Of a stretch of 64,000 bases of DNA, positions 39,275 to 44,232 are shown in pieces; within the stretch, counting starts at the first letter, position 1; the number at the start of each line of letters is the position of its first letter. Location of the stretch: NCBI GenBank assembly GCA_025594325.1, contig JANHCV010000001.1, positions 992,001 through 1,056,000 on the forward strand, given 5' to 3'. A model generated the notes under the pieces. That model worked only from the letters and a program-made list of their open reading frames with translations. It ran no database searches and was not told the DNA's origin. The position numbers and the translations under genes were made by a program. This DNA is from Blastocladiella emersonii ATCC 22665. Its lineage: Eukaryota > Fungi > Blastocladiomycota.

Positions 39275-42200
39275 TTACTTGAGCGGCGGGAACGCGACGC
39301 GGTCGTCGAGCACCGACACGACGGGCGTGGTGATGACGGGCGGGTTGGACGGGCGGCGGAGCGCGCGCGTCGACGCCGCGGCGCGGGCAGCGGCGGCAGC
39401 CGACTTGGCGGGCGCAGGCGCCGCCGTCGTCGGGACACTCGCGGCAGCGGGAGCCGCAGCGGCAGCGGGCGCCGGGGAGCTGCTCTTGGCGGGAGCGGCG
39501 CCCTCGGACTTGGCCGCCTGGGCGGCGGCGGCGGGGCTCTTGCCCTTACCGTGGTGGTGGCCCTTGGCGTGGTTACCGGCCTGGCGCTGCTTCTTGCGCT
39601 GGATCGCGACCGACTCGGCGGCGTACTTCTTGAAGTCGGCGATGGTCTGGAACTTGGCAAGGGCGGCCGAGAGCTCGGGGCGGACCGTGACGGGGTTCTC
39701 CTCCTTGTCCTTGCGGTAGTAGAGGTAGGCCCAGAACTTCTCGAGGCCGTACAGGAGCTCGTGGGCGCGGTCGTCGGCGTCGGCGGCGCGGCGCTGCTCG
39801 TGGGCGGCGTAGTCGGCGAAGGTGAGGTCCGCGAAGTCGCGGAACACCTCGGCGCGGAACTTGTTCTCGAGCCCGTAGCTGTAGAAGCGGTACAGGCACT
39901 CGGTGCCGTACCGGTACCCCTGCTCGGCGTCCTCGAGCGCGAGCTTGCGGAACTCGGCGTACATCTTGCGGTTGAAGTGGTCGCGCAGGAAGTGCGACCA
40001 GAACCGGTACAGCGTGTTCATCTCGGCGCACCCGACCCCGTGCCGCTTGCGCTCCTTGAGCGCCTTGGAGTGGTACTTGAAGTACTTGTGCTGGATGAAC
40101 CCGTTCTCGCGCAGCAGCTCGTGGCTCGGGTGCTCGTGCCCGATCGCCAGCGTCAGCTCCTGCGCGAGGTCGGCCGCGTCAGCCGACTTGCTGAGGCGGT
40201 CCGCGTCGGCGGGGTTGGACGTCGACAGGAGCGCCGCCGCGGCCGCCGCCGCCGTCGCCGTGGCGTTGGCGGCGTCAGCAAAGGTGGCGTGCGTGGGCGA
40301 CGTCGCGGGCGAGAAGACGTAGCCGACCGACTCGGCGGCCGACGGGAAGTAGTTGCGGGTGTCGGGCTTCTCGGCCTCGGCGTCGGCGGGCGCGCCGCTG
40401 ACGGGGAAGAAGCGCGACTTCTTGTTGTTGCCGGCGGCGGCGTCCTTCTTCTTGTTGCTGGCGGCGACCTGCTGGATGAGCGGCGTGGGCTTCTTGGACG
40501 GCTTGACGGGCTCGATGGTGGTGCTGGGGGTCGCGTCGCGGCTGGCGACGGTCGTCACCTTCTGGTTGTCGGAGGCGGCGGCGGACCGCGCGGACCGGCG
40601 CAGGGCCACCTCGTACTGGTACAGGCCCTCGTTGATGGCGTCGTTGAAGTCGTCGCCGACCGACTTGCGGTCGAACCCGATGTTGTACCCCTTGTCCTTG
40701 CCGTCGTGCTTCTTGACGCGCTGCGTCACGATCACGAGCGTCGACAGCATGTCGTCGGGCAGCTCGTCGTCGGACCAGCCCTCGACCCACTCGTCCGCGT
40801 CGTAGTCCGAGTCGACGTCGCCCTCGCCGCGCAGCACGCGGTGGCGCAGCTCCTCGTCGAGCTGGAACATCTCCTCGTCGTCCTCCTCGGCCGCCACCTC
40901 AGCGGGAGCGGGGACCGCGGTCACGGCGTTGCGCGATGTCTGCGACGAGGTCTCGGCGACAGCGGGCACGGCGGCCGCGGGGAGCGGAGCGGGACTCGGC
41001 GTGGCGCGGTGCTCCGACGACGGCGTCGCGGCGAGCGCGGGCGAGCGCGGCGAACTGGTGCCGCTGCCGCGCGTCGACAGCTTGCGCGTGCGCGCCGCGT
41101 TCGAGATCTTGCGAGTGCGGACGACCTGGGTCCAGCCCTCCTCCTCGGTGGCTTCGGCGGCAGCCGGCGAAGCGGGGGCGGGGGCGGCAGCAGCGGGAGC
41201 GGCGGTCACCTCCTCGGCGACCTTGGCGGGCTCGACGGTCTCGGTGGCCGTGGGGGCGGCGACCTCGGCCTCGGGCTCGGGCTTCTTCTCCTCGACGGCG
41301 GCGGCGGGCTCGGCGGCCTTGGGCTCCTCGACGGTGGCGACGAGCGCGGGGACGACGGGGGCCACGACAACGGGCGTGTTGACGTACTAGATCAGGGAGC
41401 GAGAGTCAAGTCAGCAACTGCGAGTTCAAGACGGCGGATCGGGTTGACGCTGGATCCGAGGGCAAGGAATGACGAGTCCTGGTCGCTCACAAGTGTTCCT
41501 GACGACTTAACTGACGGGCACGCCGCCCGCGACCCATCTCCTCGCCGCCATCCGCACCAGCAAACGCCCGCTCAGCATCGAGCAACCGACCGACCGAGAC
41601 GCAGTGGGACCGAGCCGCGGTCGTGATCGAGCTGCCGCGTGCGCGCCGCGAACTCGATCACGGCAGCGTCGATGAGCTGCGCCCGCGGCAACGGTCGGTC
41701 GGTCAGTGGTCGATGCTCGAGTCTCGAGCTGGCATGGCACTGGTAGTTGCGGGGACGGCGGCGAGGGAGCGGGTGGCAGAGCGGGTACGCAGAAGGAGAG
41801 AAGGTAGGAAGAACAGATTTGGTTGCACAACAAAAACGGGATAATGATGGAGGGAGTGAAGGGAGCAAAAACGAGTGGACGAGAGATCACCCATCTAAGG
41901 CCCACCGGGACGACAAGGCAGCGAGGCGGACCGAGTGTCGACGAGAGGAGCGAGGGTGAGGGAGGCACGGGTCGGGCGAGGGAGTGATGGTTGGGGAGAT
42001 GGGGCCGCCCCGGCCGAGTCGTACCAGAGTGCCATGCCGTCGGACTGCGTGAGTGAGCTGGGCGAGCGAGACGAGTGCTGGTGCTGCGGATGGCGGCGAG
42101 TCGAAAAGGCCGCGTGCGCGGCGACGCCGTGCAGCGACAGGTCGACGGGAACACGGCGAGTGGTCGATGCGCGCGAGGACCAGGACGCCAGGATGAGCCG

Positions 42201-44232
42201 AACGGAGGGGTGGGGGAAGAGAGGTAGTGGAAGCGGGGAGAGGAGCAGCGATAGAATGGAAACTAGTGTAAGGGAAAGGAACGAACGAGAGCGGAAAAGT
42301 AGCAAACGGGAAGGAAGGGAGAGAGAGGATGCTACGTGGTAACAGATGGGAGGACGAGGGCAGGTAGGGAGGGAGGAGGATGGGATCCGAGCGTCAACGA
42401 GAGGAGGAAGATCAGGCACTCACCGCTGGCGGGGTGTAGGTCGACTTGGGCTTGAGCGACTCGGCGACCTCGGGGGCGAGGGGCCACGTCTGCCAGTTGG
42501 TCTTGCAGCGGACCAGGGTGCGGTCGGCCGAGAGCTCGACCTTGTCCGAGTTGGCGAGCGAGTCGGTGATGAGCTCGAGGCTGTCGGTGAGGATGCGGAC
42601 GCGGTTGAACTTGGCGAGGAAGGCGAGCTGGACCCAGCCCTCGGCGAGGTCCATGTTCTGGCGCAGGTACAGGTCCTTGCACAGGTTCTCGACCGAGAAG
42701 TAGTACTCGATCTGCTGCTGCACAATCGACTTGAGCTGCGTCGTGTCGACCGTGAACCGCGTCGACGCGGCCGAGTGCGACTGCGAGTACATGGGCTGCT
42801 GCGCCGACGCGTACCCGGCGTGCGAGTACTGGCCGTGGTGGTGGTGGCGGTGCTGGCGGCGGGGGCCGTTCTGCTGGTAGCCGTAGCCGTTGAGCGACAA
42901 GTACTGGCCGTTGGCGCCGGCCTGCTGGTTGTTGCGGTTGTTGCGCGGGCGCGGCGAGCGGGCTGGGGTGCCCTCGGCGGCGGCCGTCGGGAGGACGGCG
43001 GGCGTGGTGGGCTTGGGCGGGAGGGGCAGCTTGGAGCCGGTCGAGGCCGCAGCGGCATCGGCAGCGGCGGGCTCAGCAGCACCGTTTTCGGTGTTGGCCG
43101 AGGCATCAGCGGCATCAGCGGAGGCGGGGGCAGCCTGCTGCTTGTCGGCGTCGGCCTTGTTGCGGTTGTTGCGCTTGGCCTTGGGCGCGCGCGGGGTGCC
43201 GTCGGCGTTGACAGCGGGGGCGCGGGTGCCCTCCTTGCCGTTGTTGTCGCGGGAGCGCGGCGAGTTGGCGGAGCGGGTCGACTTGGGGACGATCTCGATC
43301 TGGACGGCGGTCCAGGCGGCCTTCTTGCCCTTGCGCGGGGTGCCCGAGGCGGACGACTCCTTGGGCGAGGGCGCGACCGAGTCGGACGCAGCAGCGGCAA
43401 CAGTGTCGACGACGGGGGCAGCGGCGCGCTTGGCCTCGGCCTGGACGGGGGTCGCCGAGCGGGTGGCGGCGGGCGACGAGGTGGCCGAAGCCGGGACCTT
43501 GGCCTGGTCGAGCGACGGCCACTTGTTCTCGGCGGAGGCGGCAACGGGCGCATCGACTACGGAGTGCGGATCGGAGTGTGAGTGGCGGGTCGAGCGAAGG
43601 TGAATGCAGCAGATCCGCGACGAACCTGCTGGAGCAGCGAGCGACACGGCGAGCGCGGCAGGGACCTTGCCCCAGGCGCTCACTGCAGGGATCGGGGCGG
43701 GGACGTAGACGACGGGCTTGGCCGGAGCAGCAGCGGCCTCCTCGGCGGGGGCAGCCGACGACTCGGCATCGGCAGCCGCCTCAGCGGAGGCAGTCTCGGC
43801 CTCGGTGGCGGCAGCCGGCGCATCCTTGGCGGCGGCGGGCGAGCCAGTCGACGACGAGCGCGGGGCGCGGGGCGCGCGCGGGCCGGCCGACCTGGCGGGG
43901 CGGGCGGCCTCCTCGCGGGCGCGCTGCTTGGCCTGCTGCTTGCGGGCGTGCTTGCGGACGACGGGCGCAAAGTCGTCGTCGTCGCCGCCAGCGGTGGCGG
44001 CCGCGGGGGCGGGAGCGGGGGCAGCAGGGGCGGCGGCGGGAGCAGCCGACGACGAGGCCGCGGGCTCGGCAATCGTCACGGGCGCGGCGGCGGCCGACGC
44101 GGCGGGCTTCTTGTGCTGCAGCTCGGCGACGAGCGAGGCGGGCTTCGGGGCCGGGATGGCGTTCCACGGCGACTTGATGGGGGCCGGGGCGGGCGCCGCC
44201 GGGGTCGGGGCTGGGGCGTCCTCGTGCGACAT
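39275..44232 (-). CDS. LARP1: La-related protein 1 (La motif plus DM15 repeats), 3 exons with one 1037-nt intron
   Basis: La motif [42 protein letters not shown] (~42480-42730). DM15 [12 protein letters not shown]...[33 protein letters not shown]...[17 protein letters not shown]...[11 protein letters not shown]. Phase-0 intron GTGAGT(42423)...CTAG(41387) joins the two long ORFs in frame. Probable short in-frame intron at ~43560-43628. Confidence 0.9.
41387..42423 (-). other. Long spliceosomal intron of LARP1 with nested inverted repeats (predicted large RNA stem)
   Basis: Complementary pairs: 41443-41457/42383-42398, 41476-41484/42178-42186, 41493-41499/42148-42154, 41521-41526/42118-42123, 41541-41562/42076-42100, 41731-41745/42022-42038. 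Internal pairs 41575-41596/41692-41716 and 41622-41631/41653-41662. Confidence 0.75.

What the first reader, a model, noticed from the sequence alone, without database searches (positions are those of the whole stretch)
41387..42423. A 1-kb LARP1 intron folded by nested long-range helices into a normal-length intron
Seen: this intron is 1037 nt, while the others I modelled are roughly 45-190 nt. In the pre-mRNA, GUUGACGCU-C-GGAUCC (42398-42383, 25 nt after the donor) is complementary to GGAUCC-AGCGUCAAC (41457-41443, ~28 nt before the branch-like GCUGAC at 41415-41410). Pairing leaves ~80 nt unlooped, like a typical intron here. Further helices nest inside: 9 bp 41476/42186; 7 bp 41493/42154; 6 bp 41521/42123; 16+6 bp 41541/42100; 5+5 bp 41565/42064; 10+5 bp 41731/42038. 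A side domain (41575-41716) contains a 10-bp hairpin. A 7-bp helix (41599-41605/42043-42049) would cross it as a pseudoknot or alternative fold. Established: intronic stems that shorten donor-to-branch distance aid splicing in yeast (e.g. RPS17B). Inference: a structured regulatory RNA or an intron-hosted ncRNA, placed between the La and DM15 halves of the gene.
Basis: partly seen in the sequence, partly recalled or inferred. Interest (0 to 1): 0.75.

Follow-up and report, generated by a model that had tools for sequence, protein, structure and literature searches.

The report
Conserved folded long intron in LARP1
The LARP1 gene of the water fungus Blastocladiella emersonii has an intron about 15 times the usual length; its RNA folds far more tightly than chance allows, and it holds a short helix whose sequence is identical in two other fungi of the same order, so it is probably a functional RNA structure and not junk or a transposon.

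Summary
The intron is 42423..41387 on the minus strand: 1037 nt, phase 0, GTGAGT...CTGAC...TAG.

The sense strand folds far better than shuffled copies (z -6.8). The antisense strand does not (z -1.3), and 16 other window segments average -0.3.

It is not a young multi-copy MITE. It is single-copy in the genomic contigs, and an intron of 0.8-1.1 kb sits at the same position in Catenaria, B. britannica and Paraphysoderma.

Be, Bb and Ca share only two non-trivial words: CGGCAUGGCAC and its complement UGCCAUGCC. These form a 9-bp invariant helix core (11-15 bp in each species). The surrounding stems differ in sequence but build the same three-way junction, and the excess stability is sense-strand-specific in all three.

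Two corrections. Shuffled sequences also bring donor and branch point close together, so "collapse to normal length" is not diagnostic. The 15-bp end-closing stem is found only in B. emersonii.

No RNA data could be obtained, and function is inferred: most likely a cis-acting splicing or regulatory structure. An internal promoter is the main rival.

Other first readers of this scan noted stem-closed long introns elsewhere in this genome. Those notes are unchecked.

The parts
41387..42423 (-). LARP1 long intron: 1037 nt, phase 0, GTGAGT...GCTGAC...TAG
   Evidence: the frame joins the La-module exon to the DM15 exon. Homologous introns are present in Catenaria (annotated model P0018 spans it), B. 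britannica and Paraphysoderma.
42424..44232 (-). Upstream coding region with the La motif (probable start MSHEDAP...). It contains a normal 69-nt intron at 43625-43557.
   Evidence: (PF05383 relatives).
39275..41386 (-). Downstream exon with the LARP1 DM15/HEAT-like domain. There is no in-frame ATG for about 165 codons.
   Evidence: (PF21071 relatives; 68% identity to Catenaria).
42383..42398 (-). 5' strand of the terminal (zipper-like) helix, 19 nt after the GUGAGU donor
   Evidence: P 0.98-1.0; 2 of 500 shuffles as good.
41443..41457 (-). 3' strand of the terminal helix, 27 nt before GCUGAC
42191..42382 (-). C/U-rich spacer, 78-88% pyrimidine and largely unpaired. Pyrimidine-rich 5' parts are also present in the Bb and Ca introns.
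42064..42190 (-). P1 outer long-range stem, 5' strand (13 helical segments, 82 bp in total with its partner)
   Evidence: segments of 5 bp or more: P 0.96-1.0.
41470..41573 (-). P1 outer long-range stem, 3' strand (G-rich)
42028..42038 (-). P2 conserved helix, 5' strand GGCAUGGCACU (invariant word CGGCAUGGCAC begins at 42039)
41731..41741 (-). P2 conserved helix, 3' strand AGUGCCAUGCC (invariant word UGCCAUGCC)
41742..42027 (-). 286-nt loop of P2, pyrimidine-rich, not conserved in sequence. A donor-like GGUACGA lies directly after the 5' strand.
41574..41717 (-). P3 side hairpin, flush with the 3' strand of P1 (0-nt junction)
   Evidence: segments of 5 bp or more: P 0.92-0.99.
41410..41415 (-). 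Branch-point-like GCUGAC. The branch A is 24 nt from the 3' splice site.

Best explanation
This is an ancestrally long spliceosomal intron of the LARP1 gene whose transcript carries a selected, sense-strand RNA structure.

The core is a three-way junction:
- P1: an outer long-range stem.
- P2: a hairpin closed by a helix whose sequence, GGCAUGGCA / UGCCAUGCC, is invariant across Blastocladiella emersonii, B. britannica and Catenaria anguillulae.
- P3: an adjacent long hairpin.

In B. emersonii a further 15-bp stem joins the region just after the donor to the region just before the branch point.

Most likely mode of action (inferred). The structure acts in cis on the pre-mRNA. It compacts and organises a 1-kb intron in an organism whose introns are mostly 60-79 nt, so that donor and branch point can be paired. 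Because the P2 duplex is conserved in sequence and not only in pairing, it is probably also read by a trans-acting factor that sets how efficiently the intron is removed.

Shown: the helices, their statistical excess, their strand specificity, the conservation of P2, and the conserved position and length of the intron.

Inferred: that the intron is spliced as modelled in B. emersonii, that the structure forms in vivo, and every functional consequence.
For: 1. Excess stability on the sense strand only, in three species. Block-shuffle z values are: Be -6.8, Ca -5.6, Bb -2.9 on the sense strand, against -1.3, -0.3, -0.7 on the antisense strand. The window background is -0.3 +/- 1.3.

2. Shared words. 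The only non-low-complexity words of 8 nt or more shared by the three otherwise unalignable introns are CGGCATGGCAC and its complement TGCCATGCC, in the same order. In 2000 shuffles, none gave a shared 11-mer and none gave a complementary pair of shared 8-mers. The word occurs nowhere else in the 64-kb window or in the 18-kb and 15-kb ortholog loci.

3. Species-specific extension of the helix. The helix is lengthened by different complementary bases in each species: 15 bp in Bb with one G-U that would be C-A on the other strand, and 11 bp in Be and in Ca, extended at different ends.

4. Same junction topology with different sequences. The P3/P1 junction is 0-1 nt in Be, Ca and Bb, and the P2/P3 junction is 0-13 nt.

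5. Conserved long intron. Its position and phase are conserved in four Blastocladiomycota at 829-1131 nt. Known B. emersonii introns are 55-333 nt, mostly 60-79 (PMC2773782), and the same gene has a 69-nt intron.

6. Zipper geometry. The terminal stem has P about 1.0 and linkers of 19 + 27 nt. This lies inside the 42-85 nt window that defines yeast zipper stems (PMC12350175).

7. Splicing is needed. The DM15 exon of Be and Ca has no ATG before or near the conserved GWxQVVRTRK block, so splicing is needed to translate it.
Against: - No RNA-seq or EST data could be reached for B. emersonii. All four runs are genomic contigs, so neither splicing nor folding is observed.
- The terminal stem is not conserved.
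- Donor-to-branch proximity in the MFE is no better than in shuffles.
- P2 shows no covariation within its 9-bp core, so a DNA-level reading of the same inverted repeat cannot be excluded.
- The Paraphysoderma intron is equally long yet unstructured (z +0.6) and lacks the motif, so length can be tolerated without this structure.
- With only three species, the shared topology is descriptive and was not tested statistically.
Confidence: 0.5

Rival explanations
1. DNA-level element. The long 'intron' houses an internal promoter or enhancer for a transcript that encodes only the DM15 half. The two inverted copies of GGCATGGCAC are binding sites for a transcription factor, and the RNA folding is secondary.
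For: - A Paraphysoderma RNA-derived contig (L007) has its four short downstream introns spliced out, but its 5' end lies about 260 nt inside the long intron. Its ORF starts at an ATG just upstream of the acceptor.
- The B. britannica and Paraphysoderma annotations call the La and DM15 halves as separate genes.
- The motif pair lies 345-750 bp upstream of exon 2 in all three species.
- The 9-bp core shows no covariation.
Against: - In Be and Ca the DM15 exon has no usable ATG. An in-frame stop lies immediately upstream in Be, and the first Met in Ca is inside DM15.
- Excess folding is specific to the sense strand in three species, which a DNA element does not predict.
- Flanks of the motif are complementary in a species-specific way, including a G-U.
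- Paraphysoderma, the only species with the transcript evidence, lacks the motif.
- L007 may simply be a retained-intron fragment.
Confidence: 0.17
2. Intron-hosted non-coding RNA. The P2-P3 domain is excised from the spliced intron and acts in trans as a stable RNA.
For: - A compact junction with flush helices and an invariant basal helix resembles the terminal stem of processed intronic RNAs.
- The intron length is conserved, which would suit a cargo.
Against: - There is no Rfam match at E <= 1 in any of the three loci.
- TGATGA is absent from all three introns. CTGA is absent in Bb and Ca (it occurs in Be). There is no telomerase-template-like repeat.
- Loops and P3 share no sequence between species, so there is no conserved guide or functional single-stranded element.
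- No small-RNA data are available.
Confidence: 0.1
3. Neutral leftover: a fold-back transposon/MITE, or an inverted duplication that landed in an intron and has no function.
For: - The P1 arms align as a degenerate inverted repeat: 114 Watson-Crick columns, only 3 G-U, and 40 gap positions.
- The 15-bp terminal helix looks like terminal inverted repeats.
- Transposons lie nearby in the window.
Against: - The intron is single-copy in the genome contigs at 95% identity or more. Depth over the intron is at baseline, with one 29-nt stray match.
- There is no second copy in the 64-kb window.
- There is no target-site duplication at the helix ends.
- Orthologous introns are equally long, so there was no recent insertion.
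- The inner helix is conserved across species.
Confidence: 0.04
4. Not one intron. The region is either an intergenic spacer between separate La-only and DM15-only genes, or it contains unrecognised internal exons.
For: - Gene calls are split in two relatives.
- A stop codon lies 2-4 codons into the intron in all five species, so an unspliced message would give a La-only protein.
- Donor-like GGUACGA follows P2 in Be.
Against: - The phase-0 junction is conserved.
- LARP1 proteins with La plus DM15 in one chain are the rule in fungi and beyond.
- The Catenaria model spans the intron.
- tblastx finds no conserved ORF inside the introns.
- The candidate micro-exon around P2 is not conserved: there is no acceptor in Ca.
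- The DM15 half lacks a start codon in Be and Ca.
Confidence: 0.05

Closest known systems
Zipper stems of Saccharomyces cerevisiae introns (RPS17B and others; PMC2536676, PMC12350175)
   Same: Complementary segments lie shortly after the donor and shortly before the branch point of an unusually long intron. The linker total (about 46 nt) falls within the 42-85 nt definition. The stem is longer than 6 bp and more stable than shuffled controls.
   Different: - The intron is 1 kb, against 400-500 nt in yeast.
- The stem is only the outermost of a nested set of about 100 bp.
- It is not conserved in the two relatives that share the inner structure.
- The organism is a zoosporic fungus of another phylum.
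- The conserved element is an internal helix far from both splice signals.
Autoregulatory pre-mRNA structures in genes for RNA-binding and ribosomal proteins (for example yeast RPL30 and RPS14; cited in PMC12350175 as structures bound by their own protein products; details recalled from general knowledge)
   Same: A gene-specific RNA structure conserved in sequence sits inside the pre-mRNA of an RNA-binding protein. Pyrimidine-rich single-stranded tracts, the kind of sequence LARP1 is known to bind, are displayed next to it.
   Different: There is no evidence here that LARP1 or any other protein binds it. The element is in the middle of a 1-kb intron and does not overlap a splice site.
Introner-like elements and MITE-derived introns of fungi
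   Same: An intron longer than normal with unusually stable predicted folding and inverted-repeat character.
   Different: Those are multi-copy and lineage-specific insertions. This one is single-copy and sits at an orthologous position in four species.
Intron-encoded snoRNAs and other Rfam families
   Same: A structured RNA inside an intron, closed by a terminal helix.
   Different: There is no box motif and no Rfam hit. The only sequence conservation is in the closing helix.

Membership tests
Spliceosomal intron (GT-AG) | Canonical donor, branch site and acceptor that restore the reading frame of a conserved protein | tested here: met
   GTGAGT, GCTGAC 24 nt upstream of TAG, phase 0. It joins the La and DM15 halves, as in LARP1 relatives. 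Catenaria model P0018 spans the homologous intron.
Spliceosomal intron (GT-AG) | Spliced junction seen in RNA | not testable with these tools
   The look-up of sequencing runs returned only genomic DNA contigs, and no RNA run is served.
Yeast-type zipper stem (definition of PMC12350175) | Stem of at least 6 bp between donor and branch point, with 42-85 nt of linker in total | tested here: met
   9+6 bp, with linkers of 19 nt (donor hexamer to stem) plus 27 nt (stem to GCUGAC), about 46 nt in total. Pairing probability is 0.98-1.0.
Yeast-type zipper stem (definition of PMC12350175) | More stable than in shuffled controls | tested here: met
   The end-to-end duplex is -41.9 kcal/mol, against -29.9 +/- 4.0 for shuffles; 2 of 500 shuffles are as good.
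Yeast-type zipper stem (definition of PMC12350175) | Shortens the donor-to-branch path more than expected | tested here: not met
   The MFE path is 15 steps. Shuffles have a median of 22-30, and 14-15 of 40 shuffles are equal or shorter.
Yeast-type zipper stem (definition of PMC12350175) | Equivalent stem in orthologous introns | tested here: not met
   There is no significant end-to-end duplex in B. britannica or Catenaria (z -0.6 to +0.9).
Yeast-type zipper stem (definition of PMC12350175) | Disruption lowers splicing efficiency and compensation restores it | not testable with these tools
   Needs an experiment.
Fold-back element / MITE | Multiple copies in the genome | tested here: not met
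   Depth over the intron is at single-copy baseline in whole-genome contigs, with only a 29-nt stray match. There is no other copy in the window. Diverged copies below 95% identity in the rest of the genome could not be searched.
Fold-back element / MITE | Terminal inverted repeats flanked by a target-site duplication, with an empty site in relatives | tested here: not met
   The flanks of the 15-bp helix differ (..CCTCTC / CCGATC..). Relatives have equally long introns and share the inner helix.
Conserved structured RNA element | Sequence or structure conserved beyond neutral expectation | tested here: met
   The 11-mer and its complementary 9-mer are shared by three introns. No shared 11-mer and no complementary pair of shared 8-mers arose in any of 2000 shuffles. 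The excess stability is sense-specific in all three species.
Conserved structured RNA element | Compensatory base changes (covariation) in aligned helices | tested here: inconclusive
   The 9-bp core is invariant. Only the species-specific extensions (6 bp in Bb, 1-2 bp in Be and Ca) differ while staying paired. P1 and P3 cannot be aligned. Three sequences are too few for R-scape-type statistics.
Any Rfam family / box C/D snoRNA | Match to a covariance model; C and D boxes | tested here: not met
   There is no hit at E <= 1 in the window at 40500-43500 or in the L001 and L002 introns. TGATGA is absent from all three introns, and CTGA is absent in Bb and Ca.

The most novel reading that the evidence does not exclude
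The intron is a regulated switch specific to LARP1. The invariant GGCAUGGCA/UGCCAUGCC duplex, displayed on a three-way junction beside long pyrimidine tracts, would be the docking site of a trans-acting factor, possibly LARP1 itself. That factor would decide between splicing and retention.

Retention would end translation 2-4 codons into the intron in all five species examined, giving a La-module-only protein. In some lineages, transcripts that start inside the intron would give a DM15-only protein. The element would then toggle the cell between fused and split forms of a central regulator of translation.
Probability: 0.12. Interest if true: 0.8.

Novelty: new variant of a known kind. Interest (0 to 1): 0.6.

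Why it matters
Structured introns that aid or tune splicing are documented almost only in budding yeast. This candidate comes from an early-diverging flagellated fungus. It is an intron about 15 times the modal length that has been retained at one position across a phylum, with a gene-specific helix held invariant across an order while everything around it has been rewritten.

If the structure proves functional, it would show two things:
- Long-range RNA pairing is an old and general answer to the problem of long introns in organisms with short introns.
- LARP1, a key regulator of ribosomal-protein mRNA translation, carries a cis-regulatory RNA in its own gene.

It also has a practical use. 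Two public annotations (B. britannica and Paraphysoderma) appear to have split LARP1 into two genes at this intron.

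Tried and rejected
- **Rfam.** Scans of the window region and of both ortholog loci found nothing relevant.
- **RNA evidence.** The only runs holding the stretch are genomic contigs. 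They gave copy-number information but no splice junctions.
- **Global alignment.** MAFFT on the three introns gave nothing meaningful outside the two arms.
- **Conserved ORFs.** tblastx between the introns gave only low-complexity noise.
- **G-U versus A-C asymmetry.** Counted in the B. emersonii inverted repeat as a strand test. There were too few non-Watson-Crick columns (3 against 2) to say anything. Strand-specific z-scores were used instead.
- **Allomyces macrogynus.** The scaffold is scrambled and full of N gaps, so the intron region is missing.
- **More Blastocladiales.** The exhaustive protein search found no closer relatives than Catenaria, B. britannica, Paraphysoderma and the Allomyces fragment. 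The metagenome scan gave 13 loci, all 43% identity or less overall (up to 67% in the best local segment), none with the motif.
- **Micro-exon around P2.** An acceptor and donor flank it in Be, but there is no acceptor in Catenaria, so the idea was rejected.
- **Telomerase-template and box C/D motifs.** No telomerase-template repeat and no TGATGA C box in any of the three introns. CTGA is absent in Bb and Ca but occurs in Be.
- **Possible second motif.** A colinear motif UUCGACUCGC lies 43-105 nt upstream of P2. It is at the edge of chance and is not claimed.
- **One run failed.** A background z-score run timed out and was repeated at smaller size.
- **Not run on tool alignments.** A formal pair count needs a typed dot-bracket string of several hundred characters, so the equivalent counts were made in scripts.

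Full report
**The object.** The window comes from Blastocladiella emersonii. An earlier scan note says so, and the nearest protein relatives being Catenaria and B. britannica agree.

On the minus strand, an ORF with a La motif (PF05383 relatives) ends at ...TYTPPA. It is followed by GTGAGT at 42423. After GCTGAC (41415-41410) and TAG (41389-41387), the frame resumes with YVNTPVV... and runs into a DM15/LARP1-HEAT domain (PF21071 relatives). The intron is therefore 1037 nt and phase 0.

The same gene holds an ordinary 69-nt intron at 43625-43557. Published B. emersonii introns span 55-333 nt, most of them 60-79 nt (PMC2773782). I searched the two exons separately by reference.

- The terminal helix is 9+6 bp with one bulged C (42398-42383 / 41457-41443).
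- Inside it, thirteen helical segments (82 bp) form an outer stem, P1: 42190-42064 with 41573-41470.
- P1 encloses a hairpin closed by an 11-bp helix, P2: 42038-42028 / 41741-41731, with a 286-nt loop.
- Next to P2 lies a 144-nt side hairpin, P3: 41717-41574.

The fold is far from chance:

| Test | Result |
|---|---|
| Sense MFE vs dinucleotide shuffles | -372.9 vs -317.8 +/- 8.0, z -6.9 |
| Sense vs block-wise shuffles (local composition kept) | z -6.8 |
| 16 other 1037-nt window segments | mean z -0.31, sd 1.34, minimum -2.74 |
| Antisense strand | z -0.8 to -1.3 |

**What it is not.** It is not a young multi-copy fold-back element.

- In whole-genome contigs of the same organism, the intron bins sit at single-copy depth. 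Only a 29-nt GC-rich stray match occurs elsewhere.
- blastn finds no second copy in the window.
- The helix ends carry no target-site duplication.
- Rfam gives nothing at E <= 1.

**Orthologues.** The word-based and exhaustive protein searches give these as nearest relatives:

- Catenaria anguillulae (P0018, 68% identity over the conserved part)
- B. britannica (P0019)
- Paraphysoderma sedebokerense (P0138, named)
- a fragmentary Allomyces model
- an unidentified metagenome eukaryote (P0020)

Their loci, mapped with the two B. emersonii exons, all show an intron at the same place and in phase 0:

| Species | Locus coordinates | Length | Notes |
|---|---|---|---|
| Catenaria | L002:6436-7566 | 1131 nt | spanned by the deposited gene model |
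| B. britannica | L001:7160-7988 | 829 nt | deposited annotation splits the gene in two |
| Paraphysoderma | L005:6182-7295 | 1114 nt | deposited annotation also splits the gene |
| Metagenome relative | L004:5571-5991 | 421 nt | |

The Allomyces scaffold is scrambled and gapped, so it is unusable. A long intron here is therefore ancestral to the phylum and not a B. emersonii accident.

**The conserved helix.** The three Blastocladiales introns cannot be aligned globally. They still share exactly two non-trivial words: CGGCATGGCAC, and further downstream its complement TGCCATGCC.

- In 2000 composition-preserving shuffles of the three introns, no shared 11-mer arose and no complementary pair of shared 8-mers arose.
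- The word occurs nowhere else in the 64-kb window or in the 18-kb and 15-kb ortholog loci.
- It is absent from the Paraphysoderma and metagenome introns and from 13 further LARP1 loci fetched from metagenomes.

The two words pair in the predicted fold of each species, with probabilities 0.95 (Be), 0.99 (Ca) and 0.67 (Bb). The helix is lengthened by different bases in each species:

- Be: GGCAUGGCACU / AGUGCCAUGCC
- Ca: CGGCAUGGCAC / GUGCCAUGCCG
- Bb: GGUGGCGGCAUGGCA / UGCCAUGCCGUCACC, which includes one G-U

The loops (142-286 nt) are not conserved.

**Conserved architecture and strand.** In Catenaria, an outer long-range stem (314-363 / 915-955) encloses the conserved hairpin (384-581). A second long hairpin (582-913) starts on the very next nucleotide and ends one nucleotide before the outer stem resumes.

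In B. emersonii the same three elements are arranged the same way, with a 0-nt P3/P1 junction. In B. britannica the conserved hairpin (141-312) is followed five nucleotides later by a long domain (318-769), and a weak outer stem resumes one nucleotide after it.

Excess stability is present on the sense strand in all three species and absent on the antisense strand:

| Species | Sense z (block shuffles) | Antisense z |
|---|---|---|
| B. emersonii | -6.8 | -1.3 |
| Catenaria | -5.6 | -0.3 |
| B. britannica | -2.9 | -0.7 |

The Paraphysoderma and metagenome introns show no excess (z +0.6 and +0.3). All three structured introns have a pyrimidine-rich 5' part and a G-rich 3' part that pairs back onto it. 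I take this as good evidence for selection on the RNA of the transcribed strand. The shared topology is described, not statistically tested.

The attractive claim is that the stems reduce a 1-kb intron to about 80 unlooped nucleotides. The arithmetic is correct, but the claim is not diagnostic. In shuffled versions of the intron, with donor and branch regions held fixed, the MFE also brings donor and branch point within a median of 22-30 graph steps. In 14-15 of 40 shuffles it reaches the native 15 or fewer. This is the known tendency of the ends of any long RNA to lie close; I recall that from the literature, but it is shown here directly.

What is unusual is the strength of the closing stem. 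It has probability about 1.0, and only 2 of 500 shuffles give as good an end-to-end duplex. Its geometry (19 + 27 nt of linker) fits the 42-85 nt window that defines yeast zipper stems (PMC12350175). However, Catenaria and B. britannica have no comparable stem near their splice signals. So the zipper is a lineage-specific addition, and the conserved part of the structure lies deep inside the intron.

**Mechanism.** I commit to a cis-acting pre-mRNA structure. The P1-P2-P3 junction compacts and organises an intron that is ancestrally long, in organisms whose spliceosome normally deals with 60-80-nt introns. B. emersonii has added a terminal zipper.

The core of P2 has stayed identical on both strands while every other intron position has turned over. 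Pairing alone does not explain this. Some factor probably reads that duplex or one of its strands. Since the host gene encodes an RNA-binding protein with a preference for pyrimidine-rich RNA, feedback is the obvious speculation. All of this is inference, and no binding or splicing data exist.

**Main rival.** The main rival is a DNA-level reading. A Paraphysoderma RNA-derived contig has its four short downstream introns removed, yet it begins about 260 nt inside the long intron and opens with an ATG just before the acceptor. It could be a transcript from an internal promoter or merely a retained-intron fragment.

Against extending this to B. emersonii and Catenaria: their DM15 exons have no start codon near the front, the folding excess is strand-specific, and Paraphysoderma lacks the motif.

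**Stop codons after the donor.** In all five species a stop codon lies 2-4 codons into the intron. Retention would therefore give a La-only product. This is what makes the switch reading in the novel case conceivable.

**Relation to other scan notes.** First readers of other windows of this genome reported several long introns closed by end-joining stems: RPS10, RPL28, YPT1, CCT7, succinyl-CoA ligase, and a 'recurrent intron-collapsing system'. None had been followed up, and I could not read those windows. Given, such notes need shuffled controls before they count. If they hold, the terminal stem here would be one instance of a genome-wide habit, while the conserved P2 helix would remain specific to LARP1.

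**Verdict.** The new finding is a sequence-invariant helix and a shared junction architecture across three species. Function is unproven. Novelty: a new variant of a known kind (structured introns and zipper stems), with no described family matching it.

Noticed in passing
L005:7033-7295 with L007:1-260: A Paraphysoderma sedebokerense RNA-derived contig (Logan, SRR8832428) has four short downstream introns spliced out but starts about 260 nt inside the long LARP1 intron. Its ORF begins at an ATG 12 nt before the acceptor. This is either an internal transcription start giving a DM15-only protein or a retained-intron fragment.
   Followed up: partly
L001:6797-10118 and L005:5582-9310: The deposited annotations of B. 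britannica and Paraphysoderma call the La half and the DM15 half of LARP1 as two separate genes on either side of the long intron. The frames and the Catenaria model suggest these are one gene that was split by the gene callers.
   Followed up: partly
window 42412-42423; L001:7160-7165; L002:6436-6441; L004:5571-5579; L005:6182-6190: In all five species an in-frame stop codon lies 2-4 codons after the donor of this intron. In two of them it sits inside the GTATGA donor itself. An unspliced message would therefore encode a La-module-only protein.
   Followed up: no
window 43557-43625 (minus strand): An ordinary 69-nt intron (GTTCGT...CTCAC...TAG) lies inside the upstream LARP1 coding region. 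Its length is a multiple of three with no stop, so the raw ORF reads through it.
   Followed up: partly
window 42095-42105; L001:7262-7271; L002:6712-6722: A possible second colinear motif, UUCGACUCGC, is identical as a 10-mer in B. emersonii and B. britannica and has one mismatch over 9 nt in Catenaria. It lies 43-105 nt upstream of the conserved helix. Statistically marginal.
   Followed up: partly
L005:7171-7295: In the Paraphysoderma intron the only good branch-like CTGAC lies about 115 nt before the acceptor, with no AG in between. This recalls the far-branch introns noted elsewhere in this scan.
   Followed up: no
L003:5000-8770: The Allomyces macrogynus LARP1 scaffold is a mosaic of mis-ordered pieces separated by runs of N. 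The La motif appears downstream of the DM15 piece, so the deposited 527-aa model is unreliable.
   Followed up: partly
window 42418-42423 with 41420-41425: The donor hexamer GUGAGU is predicted to pair with ACUCGC just upstream of the branch site (probability 0.8). If real, this would mask the donor. It was not examined further.
   Followed up: no
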